From positions 149,011 through 213,010 of IMG/VR virus record IMGVR_UViG_3300028840_006257: a stretch of 64,000 bases of DNA; one strand, 5' to 3'. Below the pieces are notes generated by a model. That model was not told the origin of the DNA, made no database searches, and worked only from the letters and a program-made list of their open reading frames with translations. The translations under genes and the position numbers were made by a program. Below, one piece after another: positions 26,601 to 47,039 of this stretch; position 1 is the first letter of the stretch; every line of letters starts with the position of its first letter.

Positions 26601-27910
26601 TCGATGTCCGGAGCGTGAACGAGGGTCTTCTGCGAGACGCGCACCAGCTGCTTCGCTCGGTCGGCATTCGTTCCACTCTCCGGCTGGCCTCTCAACGGGT
26701 GTCCGTCAAGGATCGACGAGCTTTTCGGGATCGAGTGGGATTCCTTCATTCCTACAAGCGCGACCGCATGGCCGCCATGACCGAGAATCCGTACTTCGAT
26801 CAGTGGCACCTCTGTCCTCCAGATCTCGTTGGACGAGTGGGTCAGTGCGTTCGAGAGTCCTCGCTGTGGCTGACCCTGACCAAGGACGAGAAGTCCGCCG
26901 TCTACCGGCTGATGAAGGGTTCGGGAAGCAAGTCACAGTGTCTTCGTTTTCTCAACCGAGTGAAGGGCGCCGAGGTTCCGCAGAGCCTGCGGGACGCCCT
27001 AGTATACGACTTCGAGCGCATCGTCGATTCTGAGCATACTGGAGAAATCGTCGAGATGTATGATGTCGAGGTGTTCGACGACGAGCACGCGTTCGTGGCC
27101 GACGGTTACGTCGTCCACAACACCTCGGCGGACATCACGAAGCTGGCGATGGCCCTGATCTACAAGGAGTGCAAGAAGCGGGACTGGCTCGACAAGGTCT
27201 ACATGATCATCACGATTCACGACGAGCTCGTGTTCGAGATCGATCTCGACATCCTCGCGGAGGCCGTCGAGGTGTTCCAGGAGATCATGACCCGGAACAG
27301 GACGATCACGAAGATGTGCTGGTCCGTGCCCCTCACCACCGACTGCGAGATCGGGTTCGACTGGACCGTCCCGTACGACGTGAAGGACTTCAAGTACCGT
27401 CGGGTGCGGCCCGACGGCGTCCAGGTCAACGAGAAGGGGGAGCCGACCAAGAAGGTGTGGCCCGAGGAGTTCGTGAAACTCTTCGGTCCGGTGTACGGGT
27501 TTGCCGGGGACGCGGAGGCTCCTCCGGCCCCGGCTTTCAAGCCCCTTCCCGCACCGCCCGCGGAGGCGCCCCAGAAGGCCCAGGAGGCGCCCGCACCCGT
27601 CGAGGCCCCGTCGCTCCCGGAACGCGTCGTCGAGGCTCCCGAGCGCTCTGAGACGCCCTCGACGCCTCTCCCGGCGCCGACCCTCCCGTCGGCGCCCCTG
27701 GAACGTGGTCAGGTCTATGAGTACCGGCTGCGCGCCCTCGGGGTCGGCGTCGCGGACCGCCTGGCGCGCGCCATCGTACAGTGCCACGGTCGGGGGTCGC
27801 ACCCGCTGCGCGTCGTCGGTCCGACGGGCGAGGAGGCCCTATGGGCCGGCGCGGAGATTCTGGTAAACCCCATTGAGTTCGAGACCGTCGCCGGCATGTA
27901 CGGAATCTGA
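23642..27910 (+). CDS. family A DNA polymerase with 3'-5' exonuclease domain and intein
   Basis: DLETTG, HAKFD, YAAAD; TGR; motif A DFGGVELR; motif B R..AK..NF...YG; NGPIQG|TSAD; motif C IHDE. Confidence 0.95.
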   Translation: MNLSFLDSLEEATRPDVERRAWIDDVHLELVTEKTLDGVVDDCIASGRFGCDLETTGLDNRVFDGRTKDQIVGYCLSPDVKRGYYIPVRHRKGEQHNLPIQRVETAIRRLVSSEAVAIFHHAKFDQEFLQFCDLGLWDEPRQFDDTMILAYLWNARNKQKGLKYLVRTLLGVDMIELDELFPGDHKGAKDFSELDPSWDPCVWYAAADPLFTYRLYEHLHPLVAAPDGDRGRGQEVVYNLEKMCLPATRWMERCRVYIDQDRVTELMQLGQQEYFDSMREIYDFSNESLGRRIEPGWFRLLREKFVADNPDYNINQQIHDCRLEAKRKGFDDLDGKGHYFKTEKGWPERCDVLSREQLGPLFEELQIPDLRKTEKKEQVQTTQAEIARLEEQHGEKYPFLPKIKRLGELQKALGTYLISLRNDVGPDGTLKIDYNQCGTDTGRFTTPSSQNPASDGGTKFPMHGTPATYDKSRPQCLLRARECVKARPGKAMVACDFGGVELRIATILSGEPLWLREFFRCSTCGQTFDRGDGKSTPPAPPAYCPKCGDDRIGDLHTLTGITFFGEDKVGTKEWKQLRNRAKSANFSMAYGGGPSSIVRTIKCDEQEASRHHLAFNRTYSTLKAWWDSVKAFGRAHGYVKTAFGRHYPIPDIQLPTNARGVQKQLAEQYKARVAAGKKATPPDEAAIRRQMDWNRKFRAKAERNATNGPIQGCLHADCRIPTSLGTCRIQDLWELRERGVSRFKVWTGRNWEAACALYSGLKELVVTEFESGQTIRTSPEHLFRVYREGAFGWVRQDELTPDMWVATNSMPVISEGEPVYSYDSTTFDLEGDPVKIPNFPHNRKPFVFKGNSPILWEFLGMVYGDGTIQTDYLLVHVGEAPKHLTTDFSAERLARECAEELNDALEIGAIARKRCRREGDARRPTWQIKVHNKSFRDFCRIVLGVEDQNTWTKRFPRAVWSESYENRNAFLRGYFSADGGINCESVIDVRSVNEGLLRDAHQLLRSVGIRSTLRLASQRVSVKDRRAFRDRVGFLHSYKRDRMAAMTENPYFDQWHLCPPDLVGRVGQCVRESSLWLTLTKDEKSAVYRLMKGSGSKSQCLRFLNRVKGAEVPQSLRDALVYDFERIVDSEHTGEIVEMYDVEVFDDEHAFVADGYVVHNTSADITKLAMALIYKECKKRDWLDKVYMIITIHDELVFEIDLDILAEAVEVFQEIMTRNRTITKMCWSVPLTTDCEIGFDWTVPYDVKDFKYRRVRPDGVQVNEKGEPTKKVWPEEFVKLFGPVYGFAGDAEAPPAPAFKPLPAPPAEAPQKAQEAPAPVEAPSLPERVVEAPERSETPSTPLPAPTLPSAPLERGQVYEYRLRALGVGVADRLARAIVQCHGRGSHPLRVVGPTGEEALWAGAEILVNPIEFETVAGMYGI
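25778..27121 (+). mobile_element. intein with LAGLIDADG endonuclease (448 aa) in PolA IQG|T
   Basis: Begins CLHADCRI, SPEH, LGMVYGDG and LRGYFSADG, ends YVVHN|T. Confidence 0.93.
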
Positions 27911-34010: not shown

Positions 34011-34692
34011 TCACCACAGGCGCCGGAGATCTCCCTTCTGGTATGCCTCCCAAGTGGTGCGTTTTCGGGTGCGATGGTCCACGACCTGGTTGCGTTGGAC
34101 GGCGATCGTCCGTCGTTTGTCCCCACGCGCTCCACGACCCACCTGGGCCTTCCTGTCGGCGTTCCGCCCCCGCGTCTCCCTAGCGTCGATCTTGGCCTTG
34201 AGACGCGCCCTCAGGACGGCCAGGGCCGTTTGACGGTTGACGTGCTGGCTGCGACCGCCGTCGATCCTCACGGTGATGTCCGAGGGGCGGTGCGACAAGA
34301 CCACGCAGCTGTCGGTCTTGTTCCGATGCTGGCCTCCCTTTCCGCTCCCGCGCGTGAACGACTCCTCGAGGTCGCGAGGGTCGATGTGGAGCTCGTGCTC
34401 CTCAGGCTCAGGAAGGACGGCGATCGTCACCGTCGACGTGTGGACGCGTCCGCGCTTCTCGGTCGGAGGGACCCGTTGGAATCTGTGACCCCCGGCCTCA
34501 TGGCGGAACGCCGCCACGGCCCCACGTCCTGCGACGCGCATCAGGAGGAAGCCGGGTCTCGCCTCGAGGATCTCGTGGTCAAAGACCCTCCTGGGCCATG
34601 AACTTCTCGTACACCCGGTACTGGACGCGCACGAGGTCCTTGGAGTCGTCGCCGCCCTCGGCAGCCCTGATTTCCACGATCACTCGTTCCAT
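34011..34692 (-). CDS. class I peptide chain release factor (RF1-like PxT, GGQ, lacks domain 1), made via +1 programmed frameshift, about 226 aa
   Basis: ORF1 MERVIVEIRAAEGG..EGL stops at TGA 34581-34579; the +1 frame continues DHEIL..EAGGHRFQRVPPTEKRGRVHTS..GSGKGGQHRNKTDS..RSQH.N. Confidence 0.9.
34578..34592 (-). promoter_or_regulatory. prfB-type +1 frameshift cassette AGGAG-GGT-CTT-TGA-C
   Basis: Internal SD 3 nt before CUU UGA C, the same layout as bacterial RF2. Confidence 0.88.
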
Positions 34693-35228: not shown

Positions 35229-35321
35229 TGGCGAGCGAGGAGGGATTTGAACCCCCGATGGGACTTGCGTCCTCTGGATTAAAAGTCCAGTGCGTTCGGC
35301 CAGGCTACGCGTAACTCGCCC
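35229..35321 (-). tRNA. tRNA-Lys(UUU) with long variable arm and encoded CCA
   Basis: GGGCGAG/CTCGCTC-G-CCA; CTGGA-CTTTTAA-TCCAG; GGAC-GCAA-GTCC variable arm; TTCAAAT loop. Confidence 0.85.
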
Positions 35322-37665: not shown

Positions 37666-38358
37666 TCAGGCCCTGCGCCTCTCGTCGAGGATGGCTTGGA
37701 TGGCCCGGAAGCGACGGTTGCTCTCCTCGGCGAGCTCGTCGAGGCTCATGGGGACGATCTCGCGCTCGAGCCACGCCCCCAGGCTCTGCGGGGCCTCGGC
37801 CGGAGGGACGCCGAGGTGCAGATAGTGAGGTTTCACGGAGAGGAGCTGCCGCACCATCGGTCGGCTGTGGGTCGTGACGAACACGCCCCTCGTCTGCTCG
37901 GGAAGATCGGCCACGAACTCGGCCACGACCGTTCCAGCTCCGGCCGCGGCCGCCTCCCCCATGCCGATGTCGGGCTCGTCCCAGTAGAGGAGGTGCGAGT
38001 GCGTCCGAGCTCGGCACGTGCTGATGGCCGTCCTCACCGTCATTCCCGAGTTCTCTCCGGTGGAGCGGAAGCCCTCGTCTCCGTAGACGAAGCCCTTCAT
38101 CGCCCCCATCATGTTCATGCCGGCGCGGGCCTCCATGCTGAGGTGGATGACCTCCTTGATGGAGGTGTGGCTCTTGGCCGACGCCTGAACGCAGCGTCGG
38201 AAGAAGCTCTTCCCGCTCGCGTTCTCTCCGAGCACGAGGAAGAGGGGCGACGACCCCTTCACCCAGAGGGCCGGGATGGCGGGTTCGTCGCCGACGAAGT
38301 ATCGCCAGCTACCGAGGATGTTTCCGACGATCCAGAGGCCGGTGCTCGGCTTGCTCAT
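37666..38358 (-). CDS. stand-alone ABC-type ATPase
   Basis: GENASGKS, STGE signature, WDEPD, VTTHS. Confidence 0.8.
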   Translation of the reverse strand: MSKPSTGLWIVGNILGSWRYFVGDEPAIPALWVKGSSPLFLVLGENASGKSFFRRCVQASAKSHTSIKEVIHLSMEARAGMNMMGAMKGFVYGDEGFRSTGENSGMTVRTAISTCRARTHSHLLYWDEPDIGMGEAAAAGAGTVVAEFVADLPEQTRGVFVTTHSRPMVRQLLSVKPHYLHLGVPPAEAPQSLGAWLEREIVPMSLDELAEESNRRFRAIQAILDERRRA

Positions 38359-39197
38359 CGGTCTCCTCCGTCGAACAGGAGGATCCGGTCGAGCATGGCC
38401 GCCGGGAACCTGCGTCGCAGGATCTCCTCGGCCTCCTCGCGCGAGTGCTTCATGGACCTGTGCGTGAGCACGAGATAGTCGCCCTCGAATTTCTCGCAGT
38501 GCTCGGCCATCTCGGCCACGTGCGTGTGGCCGTAGCGCCGCGCGCCCTCGACGTTCGCGTCGTCCATCTCCCAGGTCGTGACCTCGTGGACGAGCACCTT
38601 GGCCCTCCGAGCCCTCTCGTGCTCCAGCAGGAAGTCGATCCGGGTGTCGCCCGAGACCACCAGGAGGGTGCTCACCACGTCGTCCGTGACCTGCACGCCC
38701 TCCCGACGGAGGCGCCCTATCTCGGAGCCCTCCATGCCGACGAACTCGGTCTTGAGCTTGCTCGTGGTGCGGTCGACGCCCCACCCGAGCGACGCCCCCC
38801 GGTGCCAGCTCCGCATCGCGTGTACGACCGCGCCGCGTCCGAGCTCGAAGAAGTAGCCGGGCCTCGCGGGGTAGAGGCGAACCTTCGCCTCGTGCTCGCT
38901 GTCCCGCTGCACGTCGCGCATCGCCTCGAGGAGCCTCTCCATCGGCTCGCCGAGCTCGTCCGGTAGGTAGACGCTCAGCGTCGCCTTGTTGCGCCGAATG
39001 GAGCGCAGGCTCACGATGTACGGGAGCGCCGCCACGTGGTCCGCGTGACCGTGGGTCAGGAAGACGTGGTCGACGGTCGCCCCTGGCACCGCGCCCGCGT
39101 CGAACACAGCGCGGATCTCGGGGACGTGGAACGCCGTCTGGCAGCCGCCCTGGGCGAACCCGTGCAGCGTCACGCCGCCTATGCTGATCTTCTCCAT
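38355..39197 (-). CDS. RNase Z-like metallo-beta-lactamase
   Basis: FDAG, THGHADH, SGDT, HEVT, GHTH, LTH.S. Confidence 0.85.
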   Translation of the reverse strand: MEKISIGGVTLHGFAQGGCQTAFHVPEIRAVFDAGAVPGATVDHVFLTHGHADHVAALPYIVSLRSIRRNKATLSVYLPDELGEPMERLLEAMRDVQRDSEHEAKVRLYPARPGYFFELGRGAVVHAMRSWHRGASLGWGVDRTTSKLKTEFVGMEGSEIGRLRREGVQVTDDVVSTLLVVSGDTRIDFLLEHERARRAKVLVHEVTTWEMDDANVEGARRYGHTHVAEMAEHCEKFEGDYLVLTHRSMKHSREEAEEILRRRFPAAMLDRILLFDGGDR

Positions 39198-39239
39198 GAT
39201 CACCTGCACGGGGCGTTCGTGAAATTTACAGAACCCCCG

Positions 39240-39431: not shown

Positions 39432-39451
39432 CTTGGATTCTTTCGAGGTTG

Positions 39452-39524
39452 TGCCCCAGGACGGAGTTGAACCGCCGACACTCTGGACTTCAGCCAGATG
39501 CTCTACCGCCTGAGCTACCGGGGC
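39452..39524 (-). tRNA. tRNA-Phe(GAA)
   Basis: Cloverleaf; TCTGG-CTGAAGT-CCAGA. Confidence 0.9.
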
Positions 39525-39525
39525 G

Positions 39526-39601
39526 TGGTCCCTCGGGCGGCGCTTGAATCCGCGTCTCCTGGGCTTCAACCAGGCGCTTGAACCGTCTCAGCTACCGAGG
39601 G
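39526..39601 (-). tRNA. tRNA-Phe(GAA), divergent copy with CCA
   Basis: CCCTCGG/CCGAGGG-A-CCA; CCTGG-TTGAAGC-CCAGG; imperfect T-stem. Confidence 0.75.
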
Positions 39602-39646
39602 GCATGGCATTGCGCCGAGCCGCTCTCCCGAAGGAGACCGACCCGG

Positions 39647-39799
39647 CTAGGCGAACAGCTCCGCGGTGACGGGGTGCGTGACGGGGATCGAACCCGTAAC
39701 CTCCTGGGCCACAACCAGGCGCTCTGCCATCCGAGCTCCACGCACCATGAGATGATGGTGTGGGGCCTCGTCGGCGTCGGTATGTCGTCCAGCGAGCAC
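39647..39799 (-). CDS. His-rich leader ORF reading through tRNA-His (50 aa)
   Basis: AGGA..GTG; MLAGRHTDADEAPHHHLM.., open to TAG 39649-39647. Confidence 0.5.
   Translation of the reverse strand: MLAGRHTDADEAPHHHLMVRGARMAERLVVAQEVTGSIPVTHPVTAELFA
39673..39746 (-). tRNA. tRNA-His(GUG)
   Basis: G-1:C73 pair; CCTGG-TTGTGGC-CCAGG. Confidence 0.92.
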
Positions 39800-39821
39800 G
39801 GTCTCGGTTCCTGAAGTGTTG

Positions 39822-39849
39822 AAGATACCCGAAAATCTCCGGGTGTCAA
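39822..39849 (-). promoter_or_regulatory. sigma70-type promoter
   Basis: TTGACA-16-TATCTT. Confidence 0.7.
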
Positions 39850-39855
39850 GTGGAG

Positions 39856-39932
39856 TGGTAGCGGGGACAGGATTTGAACCTGTGGCCTCCGGGTTATGAG
39901 CCCGACGAGCTACCTGACTGCTCTACCCCGCA
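39856..39932 (-). tRNA. initiator tRNA-fMet(CAU)
   Basis: 1:72 mismatch, GGG/CCC anticodon stem, CTCATAA loop, CCA. Confidence 0.92.
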
Positions 39933-40414: not shown

Positions 40415-40455
40415 AAAGGAAACCCCGGAAGCCTCTCTCGAGGGGGCGTCCGGGG
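40415..40455 (-). terminator. probable terminator closing the ncRNA cluster
   Basis: CCCCGGA..TCCGGGG hairpin followed by TTTCCTTT. Confidence 0.55.
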
Positions 40456-40466
40456 ACGGGAAAGTT

Positions 40467-40618
40467 GGTCAACGCCGAGTGAAGAACCTTGATCGCGTTT
40501 TCACGCCAGATTTACACGTCTGGTGGCTTTTCCAATTTGCCTACCCCGCCGTGTGGTGGCGGGGGCTGGACTCGAACCAGCAAGGTTTGCTTGTGAGGTT
40601 GATCTGCGGGCGTTGACC
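40467..40618 (-). ncRNA. motif RNA D enclosing a circularly permuted tRNA-Tyr-like body (Y-RNA-like)
   Basis: GGTCAACGCC/GGCGTTGACC outer stem; order T-arm, acceptor hairpin with ACCA loop, D-arm, anticodon arm, variable arm. Confidence 0.75.
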
Positions 40619-40626
40619 TAAAGGGT

Positions 40627-40758
40627 AGAAGCGACCGAGTTGAAAGGCTGTTTGATGCAAGGAGCAGGACTTGAACCTGCGACCTTCGGTTTGTCGAACC
40701 GACGCTCAAGCCAGCTGAGCTGTCTTTGCTTGTGAGCCTGACCTTGGTGGTCGCTTCT
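40627..40758 (-). ncRNA. motif RNA C enclosing a tRNA-Val(GAC)-like body (40656-40729)
   Basis: AGAAGCGACC/GGTCGCTTCT outer stem, AGGCT/AGCCT inner stem, full cloverleaf inside. Confidence 0.75.
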
Positions 40759-40890
40759 TGGTGGCGGACCCTGGAGTCGAACCAGGTTGCTTGTGGACCT
40801 TCAACGGGTGCCTCTCCGGGAGAGGTGAGTGTTGTTGTCGGTTTTACCGATTTACCGTCGGGTGACCCCCCGCCGGGGTCTTGGTCCGCC
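40759..40890 (-). ncRNA. motif RNA B: tRNA-like RNA (GTA loop) with about 60-nt insert in the variable region
   Basis: GGCGGAC/GTCCGCC-A-CCA; CCTGG-TTCGACT-CCAGG; CCGA-CGGTAAA-TCGG. Confidence 0.7.
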
Positions 40891-40902
40891 GTGTTGTAGG
40901 TA

Positions 40903-41014
40903 GTTCCGAGAGCGTGGTCTTGCTGGCTTCAAGACCCCGACCCTCTGGGGTCGGGGATGCGCTTGTAGGACCTGCGCGTTTGGCTTTGATCCTCGAGGGA
41001 GGTTAGCCAGGAAC
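40903..41014 (-). ncRNA. motif RNA A (no tRNA body)
   Basis: GTTCC/GGAAC ends, AGGTC-CTACAAGC motif, strong hairpins. Confidence 0.5.
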
Positions 41015-41026
41015 AGCCGAGAAAGG

Positions 41027-41055
41027 AGTCTGGGGCAGCGCAGAGCCGTTGTCAA
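41027..41055 (-). promoter_or_regulatory. sigma70-type promoter for the ncRNA cluster
   Basis: TTGACA-17-CAGACT. Confidence 0.7.
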
Positions 41056-41064
41056 CCCCCTTTC

Positions 41065-41637
41065 TCAGATTTTCTCGACCCGCGCCGGCGAGATCGAGTA
41101 CCCCACCTTCCGGCGCGTCTGGACGAACTGCTGGACCGCGAGCGCGAGGAAGGCGCTCACGACTTGGATGAAGGGGAGAAATTCCCCCTCTTCGCAGGTG
41201 GCAGCCCCCGCCACGTCCTCGTCGTCGACCACGAAGTCCTCCTCCCAGATGATCCTCCCGTAGCCACCGTCGGCCGCGAGGGCCCCGTGGAGGCACGGGA
41301 CTCCGTTCGCGCGGGCGAAACCCTGGACGAGCCTGCGAGCCTCGCCGTTGTCTAGGCAGTCGACGAGGAGCTCGGCGCCGCCCAGGAGCTGGGTCGTGTT
41401 GTCGGCCGTGAGCTTGTGGCCCACGACGTCGACCTTGCGACCGAAGCAGAACTGCATGGCTCCCCGAAGCGCCTCGGTTTTCTTCTTGCCCACGCCAGCC
41501 CTCAGGTGGAACTGCGAGGCGACATTCTTCATCTCGACCCTGTCGAAATCCACGAGGGTCAGAATCACCTTCTCGTTCCGCAGGGCCTGAACCAGGTGCG
41601 AGCCCAGGGCGCCGGCTCCGACGATCGTGATCTTCAC
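41065..41637 (-). CDS. ThiF/MoeB/E1-like adenylyltransferase
   Basis: IVGAGALGS, DFDRVE.KN..SQ, GK.K, VDCLDN..AR, ATCE. Confidence 0.9.
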   Translation of the reverse strand: MKITIVGAGALGSHLVQALRNEKVILTLVDFDRVEMKNVASQFHLRAGVGKKKTEALRGAMQFCFGRKVDVVGHKLTADNTTQLLGGAELLVDCLDNGEARRLVQGFARANGVPCLHGALAADGGYGRIIWEEDFVVDDEDVAGAATCEEGEFLPFIQVVSAFLALAVQQFVQTRRKVGYSISPARVEKI

Positions 41638-41849
41638 GGCACGGTCCTCGCGTTTACGCTCCGCAGCTTTTTCCACTCGCCCTCGTGGAAACGGCAGTAG
41701 TGATGTTTGACGTTCACCTCGAGGCCGTCCTCCGTGCTTCGGATGTCGTGCGTGGGGATGACGATCCTGTCTCCCTCGATCCTGGCGCCGAGCACGGCGA
41801 GCATCTCCTCCAACCCCGGAGTGCATTCTCCCAGACGTTCGATGATCAT
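41634..41849 (-). CDS. hypothetical protein
   Basis: AGGAGG RBS; GTGA overlap with the E1 gene. Confidence 0.6.
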   Translation of the reverse strand: MIIERLGECTPGLEEMLAVLGARIEGDRIVIPTHDIRSTEDGLEVNVKHHYCRFHEGEWKKLRSVNARTVP

Positions 41850-42222: not shown

Positions 42223-42477
42223 CTACCGTCCGAACGCGGCCTTGGGACGAAGGTAGAGCCGATTGCCCTGGTCGTCCTTCGCAGTGAATCTGTCCACCAC
42301 GAAGTCCCCGAAGTTGACGTTCGGGTCGGCGTCGATTCCGGGGACGTGCCCGGCGGCGACGGCCTCGGTGGCCCACGCCTTGATGTCGGCGTCGGTCGCG
42401 TCGAACTGGACCGGGTCCGGGAGGTCACCGTTCATCCCGTTCACGGTGATGTTGAGACGTGCCTCATTCTCTTCCAT
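42223..42477 (-). CDS. ubiquitin-like (beta-grasp) protein, C-terminus ..LRPKAAFGR
   Basis: 84 aa; N-terminal beta hairpin then helix pattern; penultimate Gly; lies between JAB and E1 genes. Confidence 0.65.
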   Translation of the reverse strand: MEENEARLNITVNGMNGDLPDPVQFDATDADIKAWATEAVAAGHVPGIDADPNVNFGDFVVDRFTAKDDQGNRLYLRPKAAFGR

Positions 42478-42856
42478 TTTCCTTCTCCTGTTCTGAGTGC
42501 TTGCGAAGCTGTGCGGTCCAGTCGGGCTCGTTCGTGAGGATCGACAACGCGTAGTCGTGCTCGCCCGGTCCTTTCCAGCGCAGGGCGACGACGTTCGATG
42601 AGCTCGTGATCCACCAGGTGAGGCGCCGGCCGAGACCATGCTCGACGGCGGCGAAGGTGGTGATGTCTTCGTGGGAGGGCCCTGGGACCCCGTTGCCGGG
42701 ATGGCTGTGCGCGAAGCCGAGGCCCTCGTCCTCGCGGTGCTTCCACAGGACCAGCCAGAGGTTCCGCTTGTCGGGAATGTTCCCTCCCGTCCTGTCGGGT
42801 GGCAGGTGCCAGAACACGGGGCCCCCGGCCGTGACGACGACGCCGGTCTCGATCAT
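42464..42856 (-). CDS. JAB/MPN+ metallopeptidase
   Basis: N-terminal E, HSHP......PS..D JAMM motif. Confidence 0.85.
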   Translation of the reverse strand: MIETGVVVTAGGPVFWHLPPDRTGGNIPDKRNLWLVLWKHREDEGLGFAHSHPGNGVPGPSHEDITTFAAVEHGLGRRLTWWITSSSNVVALRWKGPGEHDYALSILTNEPDWTAQLRKHSEQEKENGRE

Positions 42857-43383
42857 GGCTTGTCTCCCTTCAGGATCGTCGTCCGTATCCCCGCAGGAAG
42901 AAGCGCCTCGGGGCGCTCGAAGAACCACCCGAACAGCGGGAAGGGGGTTTCCCAGTCACGCCGGACGAGCACGAGGTCTTCGCCGGGGGCCGTCCTGTCC
43001 ACGCTGATCTCGGCGAACTTCACGAAGGGCCTCTGCTCCCGCTGGAACATGACCACGATGCCTTCGAAGTCGAACATCACGTACTCGGCGTAGATGTCAC
43101 GCCAGAAGGGAATCAGGGCGGCTACGAAGGCTTCGATGGACGAGTAGTTCCCCACCGATCCCCACGTGAACATGTCGCCCCTGGGACCGGCCCCGACGCC
43201 GTGCCCCTCGACGACGTACCGGAGCATCCGATGGGCGTCCGCGTTGTACCCGTCCTCCGCCGAGGGATACGGCGTGGACTCTTTGAGCGCCTCCATGATC
43301 TTGAGCTGTCGGCGCGCGCACACGAAGAGCTTCGCGTCGCTTCTGACCTCGAACTGGACGGTGATGTTGCAGCAGACGCTCAT
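42853..43383 (-). CDS. hypothetical protein
   Basis: ATGA overlaps on both sides. Confidence 0.65.
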   Translation of the reverse strand: MSVCCNITVQFEVRSDAKLFVCARRQLKIMEALKESTPYPSAEDGYNADAHRMLRYVVEGHGVGAGPRGDMFTWGSVGNYSSIEAFVAALIPFWRDIYAEYVMFDFEGIVVMFQREQRPFVKFAEISVDRTAPGEDLVLVRRDWETPFPLFGWFFERPEALLPAGIRTTILKGDKP

Positions 43384-44192
43384 ACGCCTTTCTTCTTTCG
43401 CAGGGCCCTCTCAGGGGGCCAGCCTTTCAGGAGACGGTAGCGAATCGTGGTGCTGCTCAGGCCCGTCTCTTCGGCCCAAGCAGCGAGGCATTGAATTTTT
43501 CCGAAGGCCCGAATTTCCCGGTTGTTACGACGATTGCGTGCCTGTTCTTTGCGAGTCGCCCACCGGACGTTTCCAGGTCCGTAGTCCCCATCGATGTCTA
43601 GCCGATCGAGCGTGTGGTGGGGGCTCGGGGAAGGTCCCATGTCTCGTAAAAAGTTGGCGAACGACGTGATCCAGGGTTCGTGGATTCCAATCCCACGACC
43701 TCCGTAATTTTCGTACCCCATGGCTTGCGGATCTAGGCACCTCTTTTTCATTGCGTGCCATGAATTCCACTCAGGTCTCCCCCACCCGCCGTGGATAGTC
43801 GCCGTTTTCCTCAACCTCTCGGCGGCCACCTCCTTGTTCAGACAGCCGCAGGATTTCGTTTTTTCGGCAAGCAAATCGTATCGCCAGATCCACCTTTCCG
43901 CGCCACAAGAGTAGCGACACAGCACCCATTGACGTTCATTCCTGAGAACGGTGAGACGGTGAAAGACAGTGCCCTGCGGGATGGAGACGGTCTTCGAGTG
44001 CTTCTTCCACTTCTCCTGAAGTTGCTGACGTCGCAGGCATCCGCAGGACTTGCTCGCTCCCCTGACGAGATTGCAGCGACGAAACGTCATTGACGTTCCG
44101 CACTCGCAGAGACACAGAACGTCCTTGTAGCCTCGGTCTTCCATGACAGTCAGACGGCCGAAGCGCTCCCCGCTCTCTAAACGTGTCGCCAT
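43380..44192 (-). CDS. free-standing HNH homing-endonuclease-like protein
   Basis: Two G..F.RLTV..C..SKSCGCL repeats; W..MK.RC, YGGRGI, LDR.D.DGDY.P.NVRWAT..EQ..N; lower GC. Confidence 0.85.
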   Translation of the reverse strand: MATRLESGERFGRLTVMEDRGYKDVLCLCECGTSMTFRRCNLVRGASKSCGCLRRQQLQEKWKKHSKTVSIPQGTVFHRLTVLRNERQWVLCRYSCGAERWIWRYDLLAEKTKSCGCLNKEVAAERLRKTATIHGGWGRPEWNSWHAMKKRCLDPQAMGYENYGGRGIGIHEPWITSFANFLRDMGPSPSPHHTLDRLDIDGDYGPGNVRWATRKEQARNRRNNREIRAFGKIQCLAAWAEETGLSSTTIRYRLLKGWPPERALRKKKGV

Positions 44193-45106
44193 ATCACCAG
44201 CTTGCCTTCTCTCACGGCTTGCCGAATGATAAGGGGCAGGCTTTCCAATGTAAAGTAGGTGTCGTAGGACTCCTCCGTGGCGTGGTCGGTGAGGCACACG
44301 CCCGCGTCGATGATGTGGAGGTTCGTGTCGCAGACGCACTCGAGGCGCTGGCCGTCGACGCGGTACTTCACGGCCCACTCTCCGCGACGGACCCTGCGGT
44401 GGTCGAGGTAGTCGGCTCCTCCCACTTGGAGCGCGGCCCTCGCAGCCTCGGCGAAGTTCTCCTGAGCCATGGCGCGTCGGGTGGCGCCGTCCCCGAGTCG
44501 TTCGCGGAGCTCGGCACGGCGCTGCTCCCGGAGCCTCCGGGCCTCCTCCTCGGCACGTCGCCGGGCGATCTCCTGCCGACGCAGCTCGGCCTGCTCGCGT
44601 CGGTACGTCTCCATGCGGAAGGCGGCGTCGAGGGCCGGGACGACGCCGGGAATCCCGGTCACGTCCTTCTTCCCGTCGAGGTAGGCGTCCATGACCTCGT
44701 TCTCGGGACCGAGCGGGAACGCCTGCTCGAGGAAGATGAGGGGGCCCTCTGGATAGATCCTCCCGGCCCGCACTCGGGAGAACCTGTCGAGCTCCTCGGG
44801 GATGAGGTGGACCCTCTCCGAGTGTCCCACGATCGTGGCGGGATCCGGGTCCACGCGGACCTCGTCGGAGACGATCCGGTCCCCGACGAGGTACCCGGTG
44901 ACAGGATTCCTGAGGATCTCAGGCACCGGCTCGGCGCTCTCGAAACTCGTGGCCGTGTTGCCCTCGATCCTGAACCGATACCACCCGAACTCGCGCAGGC
45001 GGCTCCCCAGCTTGAAGGTGCGGGAGTCCGAGTGGAGGGACGCGCCTCCCGTCCAGGGAAGGGTGACGGTCTCCGCGCCGCCGGCCAAGAGGTCCCTCCA
45101 TCCCAT
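44177..45106 (-). CDS. protein with candidate C-terminal E2/UBC-like domain
   Basis: LHIIDAGVCL..YDTYFTLESLPLII resembles UBC G.ICL..W.P..T; operon context. Confidence 0.5.
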   Translation of the reverse strand: MGWRDLLAGGAETVTLPWTGGASLHSDSRTFKLGSRLREFGWYRFRIEGNTATSFESAEPVPEILRNPVTGYLVGDRIVSDEVRVDPDPATIVGHSERVHLIPEELDRFSRVRAGRIYPEGPLIFLEQAFPLGPENEVMDAYLDGKKDVTGIPGVVPALDAAFRMETYRREQAELRRQEIARRRAEEEARRLREQRRAELRERLGDGATRRAMAQENFAEAARAALQVGGADYLDHRRVRRGEWAVKYRVDGQRLECVCDTNLHIIDAGVCLTDHATEESYDTYFTLESLPLIIRQAVREGKLVIWRHV

Positions 45107-45113
45107 GACTACC

Positions 45114-47039
45114 TCAGGCCCACGCGGGTCTCACGAGCAGGTCCGTCCTGATGATCTGCTCCACCAGGGTGACACGACGGGGGCGCGCCCCCTGTTGGAT
45201 GGCGTCGCCCACGGGCGTCGCCGCGACCAGGTTCCTGACGATTCGGGGGATCGCGTAGGGGTCGTCGAACGTGTCCTCCTGGATCATGAAGCACGGGATC
45301 CCCAGCTTGGCCGCCGTGTCCCGGACGGCCGTGGCGTAGTCGTCGCCGTAGTGACGACGGCGCCACGCGGCCCCGCCCTCCTCGGCCACGACCTTGAGGA
45401 AGCCGAACGCCATGGGACGCAGGCCCGAGGCCTCGACCTCGCGCTCGAACGTCCTCTGCTGCTCCTCGTCGCCGGCGAACACGAACAGCGAGTCCTCGTC
45501 GTCCTTCGGCTGGTGGTGTCGGAGCGCCCAGACGCCCTGGCCGTAGTCGGTCGCCCCGCTCGCGTCGATGCCCCTGAAGGCGTGCTCTACGAGCTTGGTC
45601 GACAGCGAGCCGTCGAGCCCGTCGGCGCCCGCTGGTGCCCTGATGACGATCTCCTTCCCCACCGTGTTGAAGCAGGAGACGTGGACCCTGTCGGGCGGGA
45701 ACGACTGGAGGAACTTCGCGATCAGAGGCTTGGCGCGCTCGAGCGCCCCCTTCATCGAGGAGGAGCGGTCCACGATGAAGTAGGTGCGGATGTGTCGAAC
45801 TACCTCCTCGACGACCTTCTGGCTCGCCTTGTCGCCTCCCTCCTCCATCTGGTCTCTGAGCTCCTTCGACCGCACGTTGCGGGCGATGTTGGCCGCGCGC
45901 ATGTCCTCGGCGCGGGCCAGGGCCGCGGCGTGGCGCTCCTTGACGTCCTGCACCTTGAGGAGCCCTAGCTCCTCGAGGGTGGGCGTCATGATGATGATGT
46001 CCTTGTCGGACACGGAGCCCGCGTCGATGGCCGCGGCCACGACCGCGCGGGTGACTCCGATCTCCTTCGGGAGCAGGCCGACGATGCGTTTCCATCCGGG
46101 CCTGTCCTCCTCGATCTTGCGGCAGACGTCCTCCTCGCTGAGGTGCGCCCAGGACTCGGCCACCTTGACGTGCTTGCCGATCGCCATCTCGCGGCGTCCG
46201 TCCTCCGCCTGCTTCTGCTTCCACCGCAGTAGCTCGAAGAACCACTCGGAGCTCGGCTTGTAGCCGATCTTCCTGGCGAGGGTCATGACCGTGGTCCTGA
46301 ACCCGGCCTTCACGAGCCCCTCGAGCATCTTCGGGTTCTCCTCGCGGTACCGGAGCCACTTCTCCACGGCCTTGGGCCATCGGCCCAGGAAGGGACGCCT
46401 GGCCGACCGACCGAAGCCGAGCTCGCGGTTGATGGCCGCGATCTCGGGCACGGTCAGGACCTCCCAGATGCGCAGGAGCAGCTTCGGGTTCAGGTCCCGG
46501 TTCTTCTCCTGAAGGAGCATCATGGCCTCGCCCACGTCGCGGTAGTCTTCGTCCTCGAACAGGACCTCGCCGGCGTCGACGACGGGATCGCCCTTGCGAG
46601 ACTGCACCAGCATGAAGGCCGCGAGCACGACCTTCAGGTCCCGGTGCTCCTGACGGAACGCGTAGCTCGCCCAGCGCGCGGCGAACTCGTTGTCCATCTG
46701 CCACACGGCGGCGACCTGCCTGTAGAACCAGACGGCGACCTCGGGGAAGAGGCCGCTCTTGCGGTACAGCCCGATCTCACGGCCACCGTGGACGACCCTG
46801 TCGTCGCCGTCCATGGTGCCGATCTGGACGCGCTGCTGCTTCTTCCCGCGCCTCTCGAGGCGGTACACGACGCGCTCGCCATTCTCGCCCGCCTTGTGGG
46901 TGACGGGTTCCCACCTGACTCCGACAGTCGTACGCTGGTCGGGAACCACGATCCCGGGGCGTCCATGATATAGATGGTCCTGATGAGCGAGCAGTGTGTT
47001 GATGATCTGCTCGGCAGGTCCTAGACTTTCCTTTTCCAT
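45114..47039 (-). CDS. Ro60/TROVE-like helical protein with C-terminal vWA domain
   Basis: vWA MIDAS VDRSSSM, GATD, AGD; N-terminal FAARWASYAF..R, TLARKIGYKP, ESW echo TROVE motifs; GAGGAG RBS. Confidence 0.65.
   Translation of the reverse strand: MEKESLGPAEQIINTLLAHQDHLYHGRPGIVVPDQRTTVGVRWEPVTHKAGENGERVVYRLERRGKKQQRVQIGTMDGDDRVVHGGREIGLYRKSGLFPEVAVWFYRQVAAVWQMDNEFAARWASYAFRQEHRDLKVVLAAFMLVQSRKGDPVVDAGEVLFEDEDYRDVGEAMMLLQEKNRDLNPKLLLRIWEVLTVPEIAAINRELGFGRSARRPFLGRWPKAVEKWLRYREENPKMLEGLVKAGFRTTVMTLARKIGYKPSSEWFFELLRWKQKQAEDGRREMAIGKHVKVAESWAHLSEEDVCRKIEEDRPGWKRIVGLLPKEIGVTRAVVAAAIDAGSVSDKDIIIMTPTLEELGLLKVQDVKERHAAALARAEDMRAANIARNVRSKELRDQMEEGGDKASQKVVEEVVRHIRTYFIVDRSSSMKGALERAKPLIAKFLQSFPPDRVHVSCFNTVGKEIVIRAPAGADGLDGSLSTKLVEHAFRGIDASGATDYGQGVWALRHHQPKDDEDSLFVFAGDEEQQRTFEREVEASGLRPMAFGFLKVVAEEGGAAWRRRHYGDDYATAVRDTAAKLGIPCFMIQEDTFDDPYAIPRIVRNLVAATPVGDAIQQGARPRRVTLVEQIIRTDLLVRPAWA

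What the first reader, a model, noticed from the sequence alone, without database searches (positions are those of the whole stretch)
40467..41055. Four-unit ncRNA array sharing one motif grafted onto tRNA bodies in different topologies
Seen (- strand, with its own promoter and terminator): the units share AG(G/A)TC..ACAAGC (CACAAGCAA in three: 40595-40587, 40734-40726, 40795-40787) and an opposing (A/T)CTC next to a closing stem. In C and D the outer 10-bp stems differ completely yet pair, and the inner stems covary (AGGCT/AGCCT versus AACCT/AGGTT). C wraps a whole tRNA-Val-like body, D wraps a permuted tRNA, B carries the motif permuted inside a tRNA variable loop, and A has no tRNA. The anticodon loops are non-canonical (C33, G33, 8 nt). 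Known: bacterial Y RNAs (YrlA) are tRNA mimics encoded near Ro60. Inference: a new Y-like RNA family bound by the TROVE-like protein, perhaps as decoys for tRNA-targeting defences.
Basis: partly seen in the sequence, partly recalled or inferred. Interest (0 to 1): 0.88.

Follow-up and report, generated by a model that had tools for sequence, protein, structure and literature searches.

The report
tRNA-mimic RNA array beside Ro60-like cassette
A jumbo phage carries a small operon of four structured RNAs that graft one conserved stem-loop module onto tRNA-shaped bodies in three different ways; the family recurs in dozens of related phages and in a myxobacterial chromosome, always next to the same four uncharacterised genes (a Ro60-like protein, a partner, a ubiquitin-like protein and an E1-like enzyme), so it is probably the RNA part of a new RNA-protein machine.

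Summary
Four units lie on the minus strand at 40467-41014, between a TTGACA promoter and a hairpin-plus-T terminator.

All four share one module:
- an outer stem P1 closed by an almost invariant C-G pair;
- an internal loop whose 3' strand ends in CUC;
- an inner stem P2;
- single-stranded YACAMGC.

The module closes over the acceptor end of a tRNA-like body (unit C). It also forms a giant variable arm (B), forms the same arm in a circularly permuted tRNA with a closed acceptor stem (D), or stands alone (A).

In alignments of 48 C-type, 24 B-type and 22 D-type units from related jumbo-phage contigs and Myxococcota assemblies, P1 and P2 show compensatory changes at nearly every pair. Rfam holds no such family. 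D units reach only 22-28 bits against YrlA, whose threshold is 69.

The array ends a conserved cassette: Ro60-like vWA protein, 309-aa partner, 85-aa Ubl-like protein, ThiF/E1-like enzyme, promoter, RNA. The best structural match of the vWA protein is the Ro60 of Thermus phage phiLo. The same cassette, with one C-type unit, sits among cellular genes in Paraliomyxa miuraensis.

Best reading: Y-RNA-like tRNA mimics of a divergent Ro60-like particle. Binding, the decoy role and the Ubl/E1 link are all untested.

The parts
41027..41055 (-). Promoter of the RNA operon: -35 TTGACA (41055-41050), a 17-nt spacer, then -10 CAGACT (41032-41027). It starts 10 nt after the stop codon of the ThiF/E1-like gene.
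   Evidence: Read from the sequence. TTGAC(A) sits at the same place in L002, L004 and L210. The strict sigma-70 scan did not list it.
40903..41014 (-). Unit A, the module without a tRNA body. P1 is GTTCC (41014-41010) with GGAAC (40907-40903). TACAAGC is at 40967-40961 and CUC at 40910-40908. Two internal hairpins are present.
   Evidence: Homologous A units were found only in the closest relatives (L002, L125, L130).
40759..40890 (-). Unit B, a tRNA-like RNA with free acceptor ends. The acceptor stem is GGCGGAC/GTCCGCC followed by ACCA (40762-40759). The module forms a roughly 65-nt arm at the variable-loop position: CUC at 40829-40827, the P1 hairpin at 40825-40811 and CACAAGC at 40795-40789. 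The anticodon-like loop is CGGUAAA (G33).
   Evidence: with covariation: acceptor stem 95% paired, P2 4 of 4 pairs compensatory.
40628..40757 (-). Unit C, where the module closes over the acceptor end of a tRNA-like body. P1 is 40757-40749 with 40636-40628. P2 is AGGCT/AGCCT. CACAAGC is at 40734-40728, and its GC forms acceptor base pairs 1-2. CUC is at 40639-40637.
   Evidence: The covariance model R1 scores it at 107.6 bits over its full length.
40656..40729 (-). The tRNA-Val(GAC)-like body inside unit C. It has C33 and an A-C mismatch in the acceptor stem, and no encoded CCA.
   Evidence: ARAGORN and Rfam tRNA at 55.8 bits.
40467..40618 (-). Unit D, a circularly permuted tRNA-like RNA. P1 is 40618-40609 with 40476-40467. 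P2 is AACCT/AGGTT and CACAAGC is at 40595-40589. The order then runs: T arm; acceptor stem closed by the loop ACCACAC; D arm; anticodon arm with an 8-nt loop; small variable hairpin; CUC at 40479-40477.
   Evidence: with covariation. A sub-threshold YrlA hit covers 40525-40583 at 24.5 bits.
40415..40455 (-). Terminator-like hairpin, CCCCGGA...TCCGGGG, followed by TTTCCTTT.
   Evidence: A clearer equivalent lies after the array in L004. The strict terminator scan did not list it.
41065..41826 (-). ThiF/E1-like adenylyltransferase gene, directly upstream of the array.
   Evidence: Pfam ThiF at E 1e-22, NCBIfam ThiF/MoeB/UbaA-like below cut-offs, and similarity to PADLOC E1-E2 domains. It ends within about 0.1-1 kb of the first RNA unit in 25 or more loci. 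Invariant residues include GxGALGSH, DxD and three Cys.
42223..42480 (-). An approximately 85-aa probable ubiquitin-like (ThiS/MoaD-like) protein. The likely start is M54 of the ORF 42223-42639. It carries an invariant C-terminal RPKTPFG motif.
   Evidence: It is always just upstream of the E1-like gene (78 of 91 loci). The fold was not tested.
44177..45106 (-). The 309-aa conserved partner, immediately downstream of the Ro60-like gene. Its fold has no known relative.
   Evidence: Present in 58 of about 60 viral loci and 81 of 91 loci overall. AlphaFold2 mean pLDDT is 85, and no PDB match reaches E below 0.3.
45114..47039 (-). Divergent Ro60/TROVE-like protein. It has an N-terminal beta domain, a helical-repeat region, and a vWA domain with a complete MIDAS motif.
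   Evidence: together with PMC12135203, which identifies 9kop.

Best explanation
The array encodes a family of small non-coding RNAs that work like Y RNAs.

- The conserved module is a docking handle for a cassette protein, most likely the ring-shaped Ro60-like vWA protein. The module comprises P1, an internal loop with CUC, P2 and single-stranded YACAMGC.
- The attached tRNA-shaped domain keeps the D/T-loop elbow, an anticodon arm and often an NCCA. It presents a tRNA look-alike to tRNA-binding enzymes.
- Candidate targets are an exoribonuclease such as PNPase, by analogy with Rsr-YrlA and phiRo60-Yrl, or host nucleases that attack tRNAs.
- Several units with diverged anticodon-like loops are transcribed from their own promoter as one precursor and probably cut into separate RNAs.

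Shown: the structures, their conservation and the gene linkage.

Inferred: which protein binds the module, what the tRNA domain recruits or distracts, and any role of the neighbouring Ubl/E1 pair.
For: 1. The module is under strong structural selection in all three topologies, so it is a portable functional domain.
2. The conserved single-stranded letters (ACA.GC, CUC and the C-G closing pair) are invariant in 48 units drawn from contigs of 32-65% G+C. This fits sequence-specific protein recognition.
3. Many tRNA bodies cannot be working tRNAs. Some C-type acceptor stems have only about 3 bp, D-type acceptor stems are closed, and anticodon triplets are nearly random although U33 and R37 are usually kept.
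4. D units repeat the YrlA plan of T arm, closed acceptor stem and D arm.
5. The best structural match of the 641-aa protein is phage phiLo Ro60. That protein binds two phage-encoded Y-like RNAs and host PNPase (PMC12135203).
6. The order Ro60-like, partner, Ubl-like, E1-like, RNA is kept in 73-91 loci. It also forms a 4.3-kb island among cellular genes in a cultured myxobacterium.
7. The covariance model separates these units (70-124 bits, full length) from ordinary tRNAs (52 bits or less, partial). It finds them in 44 of 58 viral loci, all on the strand of the Ro60-like gene.
Against: - No TROVE Pfam match was found.
- The fold match has low TM-scores (0.30-0.38), and classical Ro60 structures are not among the 50 matches listed.
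- The Rsr/Ro60 binding motif GNCGAAN0-1G (PMC4201824) is absent from the P1 strands, which vary freely.
- The RNA abuts the E1-like gene, not the Ro60-like gene. Known Y RNAs lie next to rsr.
- No PNPase or RtcB gene was seen among the window ORFs that were scanned.
- All loci were retrieved through the Ro60-like protein, so co-occurrence was not tested independently.
- Retained NCCA, U33 and R37 could instead point to real tRNA-type chemistry.
Confidence: 0.45

Rival explanations
1. The RNAs are substrates or cofactors of the adjacent Ubl/E1 pair, not of the Ro60-like protein. One version has the E1-like enzyme activate the C-terminal Gly of the Ubl as a sulfur carrier that thiolates the tRNA-like RNAs, as TtuB/TtuC and Urm1/Uba4 do for tRNA. 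Another has the activated Ubl handed to the RNA's ribose end or to a target held by the RNA.
For: - The array starts directly after the E1-like gene in 25 or more loci and in the bacterial island, with the promoter overlapping the end of that gene.
- The 85-aa protein has an invariant RPKTPFG followed by 0-55 unconserved residues, and it always precedes the E1-like gene.
- The E1-like protein keeps its nucleotide-binding motif and three invariant Cys.
- NCCA is retained after the acceptor 3' strand in many B and C units, and even inside D-type closed loops.
Against:
- No TtuA/Ncs6-type thiolase, E2 or JAB peptidase was recognised in the cassette.
- The minimal bacterial unit has a roughly 3-bp acceptor stem and no CCA.
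- No case of a Ubl being transferred to RNA is known to me.
Confidence: 0.2
2. The units are free-standing decoys or sponges for host enzymes that cleave or modify tRNAs, such as anticodon nucleases. The module only stabilises them or marks them for processing, and no dedicated cassette protein is involved.
For: - Each genome carries several copies whose anticodon-like loops are highly diverse while the elbow is conserved.
- The units sit beside large tRNA clusters in jumbo phages.
- C33, G33 and 8-nt loops in the window would block normal decoding.
Against: - Invariant single-stranded letters in the module argue for a specific partner rather than simple stabilisation.
- A single unit travels with the four genes in a bacterial chromosome, where a phage counter-defence role does not apply.
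Confidence: 0.13
3. The units are unusual but genuine tRNA genes. C units would be precursors whose conserved leader-trailer stem directs processing. B units, and D units after their loop is opened by RNase P, would be chargeable tRNAs with a giant extra arm.
For: - Unit C scores as a tRNA.
- Of 48 C-type loops, 42 are 7 nt long; 34 of those have U33 and 41 have a purine at position 37.
- NCCA follows the acceptor strand in many units.
- D units resemble permuted two-piece tmRNA genes in layout.
- The window encodes an RNase Z-like enzyme.
Against: - All C-type bodies share one acceptor sequence, GCAA(A)G, whatever their anticodon.
- Many have acceptor stems of 3 bp or stems carrying inserted hairpins.
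- Thirteen of 42 anticodons start with A34, and some loops are 5, 6 or 8 nt.
- The same phages already carry standard tRNAs for the same anticodons.
- Unit A has no tRNA body at all.
Confidence: 0.12
4. The module is a small self-cleaving ribozyme or the end of a mobile element that has been copied next to tRNA genes.
For: Its position flanking tRNAs recalls ribozymes that trim phage tRNAs. There is a chance-level Twister-sister hit (18 bits, E 1.6).
Against: - No ribozyme family reaches a meaningful score.
- Too few conserved nucleotides are available for any known catalytic core.
- The position inside one cassette is fixed, not scattered.
Confidence: 0.03

Closest known systems
Bacterial and phage Y RNAs of the YrlA type (Rfam RF02553) with Rsr/Ro60
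   Same: - They are small RNAs in which the 5' and 3' ends pair into a stem.
- Inside lies a tRNA mimic built from T arm, closed acceptor stem and D arm.
- They are encoded in the neighbourhood of a Ro60-type HEAT-plus-vWA protein.
- They also occur in phages (PMC4201824, PMC7824862).
   Different: - Scores are far below the family threshold (22-28 bits against 69).
- The module joins the tRNA body at the variable-loop or acceptor position, not at the anticodon stem.
- A full anticodon arm is kept.
- There is no GNCGAA motif. The conserved letters are YACAMGC and CUC instead.
- Each array has 4-8 units in three topologies.
- The RNA lies about 4 kb from the protein gene, directly after a Ubl/E1 pair.
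phiRo60 with Yrl1/Yrl2 of Thermus phage phiLo (PDB 9KOP, PMC12135203)
   Same: It is the best structural match of the window protein. It is a phage-encoded, very divergent Ro60 with a MIDAS site, and it binds phage-encoded Y-like RNAs with a stem-bulge-stem layout.
   Different: - Sequence identity is only 14%.
- The window protein has about 95 extra N-terminal residues that form beta strands.
- Yrl1 and Yrl2 carry CGAA and lie just upstream of the gene.
- No tRNA bodies, partner protein, Ubl or E1 are described for phiLo.
Permuted tRNA genes and two-piece tmRNA genes
   Same: Unit D has the 3' half (T arm, acceptor 3' strand, NCCA) upstream of the 5' half, joined by a short loop. Its outer ends pair with each other.
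   Different: - There is no bulge-helix-bulge motif at the termini.
- There is no tag reading frame, and ARAGORN finds no tmRNA.
- The ends pair through the conserved module, which also occurs in non-permuted units.
Ubl/E1 pairs used for tRNA thiolation (TtuB/TtuC, Urm1/Uba4) and bacterial Ubl conjugation operons (Bil, Bub, CBASS Cap2)
   Same: A small protein with a conserved C-terminal Gly is encoded immediately before a ThiF-family E1-like enzyme, and tRNA-shaped RNAs lie next to it.
   Different: - No thiolase, E2 or JAB protease was recognised.
- The motif is PFG with a single Gly.
- The pair is linked to a Ro60-like vWA protein and a partner with a new fold.
- No known defence system matches in PADLOC, apart from the E1 domain itself.
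Large ornate phage RNAs found near tRNAs (GOLLD, ROOL)
   Same: They are structured non-coding RNAs of phages located beside tRNA genes, sometimes with tRNAs embedded.
   Different: There are no Rfam hits to them even at E up to 10. Here the RNA consists of separate units of 110-150 nt, each closed by its own stem.

Membership tests
Rfam YrlA (RF02553) | Score at or above the gathering threshold of 69 bits | tested here: not met
   The window D unit scores 24.5 bits. D units in L002 and L173 score 22-28 bits. Only model positions 29-81 are matched.
Rfam YrlA (RF02553) | A tRNA-like core in the order T arm, closed acceptor stem, D arm | tested here: met
   Unit D and 21 homologues have this order. 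The acceptor hairpin is compensatory at 7 of 7 pairs and the T arm is 100% paired.
Rfam YrlA (RF02553) | 5'-strand Rsr-binding motif GNCGAAN0-1G (CGAA) in the terminal stem or bulge (PMC4201824, PMC12135203) | tested here: not met
   The P1 5' strands and the loop strand that follows vary freely in 48 C-type and 22 D-type units. CGAA appears only sporadically.
Rfam YrlA (RF02553) | Encoded adjacent to a Ro60/TROVE gene | tested here: inconclusive
   The RNA lies 3-8 kb downstream on the same strand, with conserved gene order, but three genes intervene. All loci were found through the protein.
Rfam YrlA (RF02553) | Bound by Ro60/Rsr | not testable with these tools
   This needs a pull-down or gel shift.
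Ro60/TROVE proteins | Match to the Pfam TROVE domain | tested here: not met
   There was no TROVE hit for the window protein or for any of 22 homologues, even at E up to 10. PDB sequence and profile searches found only vWA domains.
Ro60/TROVE proteins | Helical-repeat ring with an inserted vWA domain | tested here: inconclusive
   In the AlphaFold2 model (pLDDT 77, pTM 0.48) helices span residues 99-413 and the vWA domain spans 417-606. The top Foldseek hit is phiRo60 9kop at E 5e-9 over 547 columns, but TM-scores are only 0.30-0.38. Ring closure was not examined.
Ro60/TROVE proteins | MIDAS metal site in the vWA domain (DxSxS ... T ... D) | tested here: met
   D424, S426, S428, T497 and D524 are invariant in 22 sequences. 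The alignment to vWA domains confirms the site.
tRNA (RF00005), unit C only | Cloverleaf scoring above the threshold of 29 bits | tested here: met
   It scores 55.8 bits, and ARAGORN calls it tRNA-Val GAC.
tRNA (RF00005), unit C only | Features needed for decoding and charging: U33, an intact 7-bp acceptor stem, a CCA end, and aminoacylation | tested here: inconclusive
   The window unit has C33, an A-C mismatch in the acceptor stem and no CCA. Across the family, acceptor stems range from about 3 bp to 7 bp or more. Charging cannot be tested here.
Permuted tRNA or two-piece tmRNA genes | 3' half with NCCA upstream of the 5' half | tested here: met
   D units have the acceptor 3' strand, then (A/G/U/C)CCA in most cases, then a loop of 6-30 nt, then the acceptor 5' strand.
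Permuted tRNA or two-piece tmRNA genes | Bulge-helix-bulge at the termini (permuted tRNA) or a tag ORF with pseudoknots (tmRNA) | tested here: not met
   The loops between P1 and P2 are 6-10 nt on each strand, not 3-4-3. No tmRNA was found.
Ubl-E1 pair | E1-type adenylation domain | tested here: met
   Pfam ThiF matches at E 1e-22 and also in the bacterial copy. GxGALGSH, DxD, and R, K and Cys residues are conserved.
Ubl-E1 pair | Small beta-grasp protein ending in an exposed C-terminal Gly | tested here: inconclusive
   The conserved ...RPKTPFG is the exact C-terminus in 11 of 119 homologues and in about 17 of 73 locus copies. Elsewhere it is followed by 1-55 unconserved residues. There is no Pfam or PDB sequence match.

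The most novel reading that the evidence does not exclude
The RNAs may belong to a previously undescribed five-part system shared by Myxococcota chromosomes and their jumbo phages. Its parts are the Ro60-like vWA protein, a partner with a new fold, a ubiquitin-like protein, an E1-like enzyme and a tRNA-mimic RNA. In this reading, ubiquitin-type activation chemistry is physically coupled to a tRNA-shaped RNA particle. Three couplings are possible:
- the MIDAS site holds the Ubl while the ring holds the RNA module;
- the Ubl marks or thiolates the RNA;
- the Ubl marks a target captured by the RNA.

The phage arrays would be expanded, diversified versions of a single-unit cellular system.
Probability: 0.3. 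Interest if true: 0.88.

Novelty: new variant of a known kind. Interest (0 to 1): 0.8.

Why it matters
- It adds a well-supported, widespread structured RNA family that is absent from Rfam. About 80 full-length C-type units scored by the model, plus B, D and A units, come from about 60 contigs. The associated protein families have over 1600 and over 2000 members.
- It is a rare natural case of one RNA module transplanted onto a tRNA scaffold in three connectivities, including circular permutation. That helps in understanding how RNA domains evolve and in RNA design.
- If the Ro60-like link holds, it widens the Ro60/Y RNA paradigm to proteins that sequence searches miss, and to phages of Myxococcota.
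- If the Ubl/E1 link holds, it would connect ubiquitin-like activation with a tRNA-mimic particle, for which no precedent is known to me.
- A cultured carrier, Paraliomyxa miuraensis SMH-27-4, makes these questions testable at the bench.

Tried and rejected
- **Rfam.** Searches at gathering and at E-value thresholds on the window and two relatives gave only tRNA hits and sub-threshold YrlA hits. GOLLD, ROOL, ribozyme and tmRNA families did not match.
- **Collection-wide DNA pattern.** The pattern CACAAGCAA...GGTTCGA returned more than 117 stretches. One that I read lies in coding sequence (L008). I dropped this route as an independent co-occurrence test, because patterns specific enough would still yield hundreds to thousands of chance hits.
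- **Phage and plasmid databases.** blastn of the array against 50,697 phage records matched only the T-arm region of ordinary tRNAs. tblastn of the Ro60-like protein found one metagenomic record, Rctr197k, where the units are unannotated or labelled as tRNAs.
- **309-aa partner.** It has no Pfam, PHROG, NCBIfam or PADLOC match and no structural neighbour.
- **Small protein.** It has no Pfam or PDB match and no annotation among 2032 homologues.
- **Exact-sequence lookup.** The lookup for the Ro60-like protein failed because the ORF start I supplied was too long.
- **Known RNA motifs, by inspection.** The P1/P2 internal loop has no K-turn (no tandem G-A), no loop E, no bulge-helix-bulge and no GNRA receptor. 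I found no complement to YACAMGC within the units.
- **Literature.** Searches found no description of this RNA or cassette.
Full report
**1. What is in the window**

The window is part of IMG/VR contig 3300028840_006257, a 213-kb jumbo-phage contig of about 65% G+C. It carries replication genes: SNF2 helicase and PolA with inteins, NAD-dependent ligase, DnaB, GroEL and methylases. Two tRNA clusters are also present.

The minus strand between 41055 and 40415 has no credible ORF. It reads as follows:
- a TTGACA, 17-nt spacer, CAGACT promoter, starting 10 nt after the stop codon of a ThiF-like gene;
- four units, A (41014-40903), B (40890-40759), C (40757-40628) and D (40618-40467);
- a G+C-rich hairpin followed by a T-rich run.

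**2. The shared module**

Comparison with relatives gives a precise definition.
- P1 is a stem of 5-10 bp whose inner pair is an almost invariant C-G.
- On the strand leaving the P1 5' arm there is an A (in C and D units; A/U/C in B), then 6-10 variable nucleotides, then the P2 5' strand, then single-stranded YACAMGC.
- On the other strand an A-rich linker ending in C is followed by the P2 3' strand, then 1-6 variable nucleotides, then an invariant CUC, then the G that opens the P1 3' strand.

The module is used in four ways.
- **C units.** The GC of YACAMGC forms the first two pairs of the acceptor stem of a complete cloverleaf, so the module clamps the acceptor end.
- **B units.** P1 is capped by a loop. 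The whole module replaces the variable loop of a tRNA-like RNA that keeps free acceptor ends, often with NCCA.
- **D units.** The architecture matches B, but the chain ends lie at P1 and the acceptor stem is closed by a loop that usually begins with NCCA.
- **A units.** There is no tRNA body.

D can be derived from a tandem pair of B units, read from one P1 loop to the next. This explains why NCCA is retained inside a closed loop.

**3. Statistical support**

| Unit type | Sequences | Cells paired | Shuffled | Partners slid | P1 compensatory | P2 compensatory |
|---|---|---|---|---|---|---|
| C | 48 | 94.4% | 69.6% | 29-46% | 9 of 9 pairs | 5 of 5 pairs |
| B | 24 | 86.8% | 69.0% | not quoted | 6 of 6 pairs | 4 of 4 pairs (94% paired) |
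| D | 22 | 89.7% | 68.1% | not quoted | 8 of 10 pairs | 3 of 5 pairs |

The 48 C-type units come from about 40 contigs. No shuffle out of 500 reached the observed value for any measure in any of the three alignments. In B units the acceptor stem is 95% paired. In D units the closed acceptor stem is compensatory at 7 of 7 pairs.

A covariance model built from the C alignment scores true units at 70-124 bits over the full model. Ordinary tRNAs reach at most 52 bits over the central part only. The model finds 59 units in 44 of 58 viral loci, all on the strand of the Ro60-like gene, and 21 at 78 bits or more in the other assemblies: 20 in the genome loci and one in the GenBank record Rctr197k (L187). 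One more full-length hit, L192 at 55 bits, is borderline.

The 7-mer alone is not rare in the window, with 28 copies against 20 expected. The case therefore rests on structure and conservation, not on the word itself.

**4. Are the tRNA bodies real tRNAs?**

The elbow is conserved: GG in the D loop and GGTTCRA in the T loop. Of 48 C-type anticodon loops, 42 have 7 nt. Among those 42, 34 have U33 and 41 have a purine at position 37.

Several features argue against decoding.
- The anticodon triplets show 23 different sequences, 13 of them starting with A.
- All C bodies share the acceptor sequence GCAA(A)G whatever the anticodon.
- Many acceptor stems have only about 3 bp or carry inserted hairpins.
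- B and D loops vary in length and sequence.
- The phages already encode standard tRNAs for the same anticodons.

These are therefore tRNA-derived scaffolds. Some may still be processed or charged, but the family as a whole is not a set of decoding tRNAs. The window's C33, G33 and 8-nt loops are real but not typical of the family.

**5. The neighbourhood**

The 641-aa protein (45114-47039) belongs to a family of more than 1600 proteins, found mostly on contigs of up to 660 kb. Pfam sees only a vWA domain, and the MIDAS residues are invariant.

An AlphaFold2 model (pLDDT 77) shows an N-terminal beta domain, a helical region and the vWA domain. Its best PDB match is 9kop at E 5e-9 over 547 columns, with TM-scores of 0.30-0.38. 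All other listed matches cover the vWA domain only.

9KOP is phiRo60 of Thermus phage phiLo. It is itself only 16-18% identical to other Ro60 proteins. It binds two phage-encoded Y-like RNAs and host PNPase (PMC12135203). The top viral matches are 502-540-aa proteins. Canonical TROVE proteins with a tRNA-like partner are already known in a subset of jumbo phages (PMC7824862).

A 309-aa protein follows directly in 58 of about 60 loci. It has a confident predicted fold but no structural relative.

A tblastn survey of 91 loci shows a fixed core order: Ro60-like (91 loci), partner (81), an approximately 85-aa protein (78), ThiF/E1-like (73). The HNH endonuclease and the other small ORFs of the window are variable.

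The RNA array begins within about 0.1-1 kb of the end of the E1-like gene in at least 25 loci. The TTGACA promoter is conserved there.

The 85-aa protein starts with a VNITW-type strand and ends in an invariant RPKTPFG. That motif is the exact C-terminus in some homologues and is followed by 1-55 unconserved residues in others. Placed just before an E1-like gene, this is the signature of a ubiquitin-like or ThiS/MoaD-like protein. Its fold was not tested.

**6. An independent context**

In species-representative genomes, homologues occur almost only in Myxococcota assemblies, which points to the host phylum.

In the cultured Paraliomyxa miuraensis SMH-27-4, on a 799-kb contig of 70% G+C, a 4.3-kb island carries the following elements in order:
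- the Ro60-like gene;
- the partner gene;
- the Ubl-like gene;
- the E1-like gene;
- the TTGACA promoter;
- one C-type unit (86.7 bits, full length).

The island lies between a FAD-dependent enzyme gene and an Rpn/YhgA transposase gene, inside a region with a Ser/Thr kinase, YcaO and halogenases. No other tRNA genes and no recognisably phage genes among the ORFs scanned lie within 10 kb. The four genes and the RNA therefore travel as a unit outside the phage tRNA region. This is the strongest argument that they work together.

**7. Interpretation**

The anatomy is that of a modular RNA: a protein-type handle joined to a tRNA look-alike. That is how Y RNAs work. The D units share the YrlA core, and the nearest structural relative of the large cassette protein is a phage Ro60 that binds Y-like RNAs.

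I therefore rank a Y-RNA-like particle first, at confidence 0.45. Membership in YrlA itself fails on score and on the Rsr-binding motif, so this is a case of "works like", not "is a".

The main rival (0.2) is that the RNAs belong to the Ubl/E1 pair that directly precedes them. Three possibilities fit:
- a thiolation substrate, as with TtuB/TtuC or Urm1/Uba4;
- an RNA-linked conjugation step;
- both protein pairs acting on one particle.

MIDAS domains do bind Ubl domains in the MDN1 system, which appears among the weak fold hits.

The remaining readings score lower for the reasons given in their entries: free decoys for tRNA-targeting nucleases (0.13), genuine tRNAs with a processing cassette (0.12) and ribozymes or mobile ends (0.03).

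**8. Novelty and limits**

I found no Rfam family, no annotation in the one GenBank record that carries the units, no defence-system model and no paper describing the RNA or the cassette.

The limits are these.
- All loci were retrieved through the Ro60-like protein.
- No expression data exist.
- The Ro60-like assignment rests on one remote fold match.
- The Ubl assignment rests on sequence pattern and gene order.

Noticed in passing
window 42223-42480 (-), and homologues in L124-L215: An approximately 85-aa protein family has more than 2000 members and no Pfam domain. Its invariant C-terminal RPKTPFG is followed by 0-55 unconserved residues, and it always sits just upstream of the ThiF/E1-like gene. 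It looks like an unrecognised ubiquitin-like protein.
   Followed up: partly
L210:10001-14260 (Paraliomyxa miuraensis SMH-27-4, NZ_JAOVZF010000163.1): A compact chromosomal copy of the cassette with a single C-type RNA unit. ARAGORN calls the unit tRNA-Arg ACG. It lies beside an Rpn/YhgA transposase and a YcaO/halogenase cluster, and this is a cultured organism in which the system could be studied.
   Followed up: partly
loci L188-L215: Homologues of the Ro60-like gene in species-representative genomes are almost all in Myxococcota assemblies (Kofleriaceae, Polyangiaceae, Sandaracinaceae). This suggests that these jumbo phages infect Myxococcota, or that phage contigs were binned with those genomes.
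   Followed up: no
window 38355-39209 (-): A metallo-beta-lactamase-fold protein with sub-threshold RNase Z matches. Its homologue in L185 carries the Anti-Pycsar Apyc1 Pfam family. It lies just downstream of the tRNA cluster at 39451-39932.
   Followed up: no
window 34011-34541 (-): A 176-aa ORF corresponds only to residues of about 160-320 of release factor 1, that is the GGQ domain region. It may be a truncated or stand-alone release-factor-like protein.
   Followed up: no
window 5211-9359 (+) and 23642-27910 (+): The SNF2-family helicase and the family A DNA polymerase both carry inteins with LAGLIDADG endonuclease domains.
   Followed up: no
window 43380-44378 (-): An HNH endonuclease gene is inserted inside the cassette, between the partner gene and the Ubl-like gene. 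It is present in only 6 of 91 loci, so it is probably a homing element.
   Followed up: partly
window 35233-35320 (-): An 88-nt tRNA with a long variable arm and the anticodon loop CUUUUAA. Rfam finds it at 38.9 bits, but ARAGORN does not.
   Followed up: partly
L187:20490-20965 (GenBank KX853510.1, Virus Rctr197k): The only public annotated phage record with the cassette. The Ro60-like gene is annotated as a misc_feature, and a D-type and a C-type unit downstream of the ThiF-like gene are unannotated.
   Followed up: partly
window 40826 and 40810 (unit B): In the window's unit B, an A and a C replace the otherwise conserved G-C pair that closes P1 after CUC. P2 there has only 3 pairs, so this copy may be slightly degenerate.
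   Followed up: no
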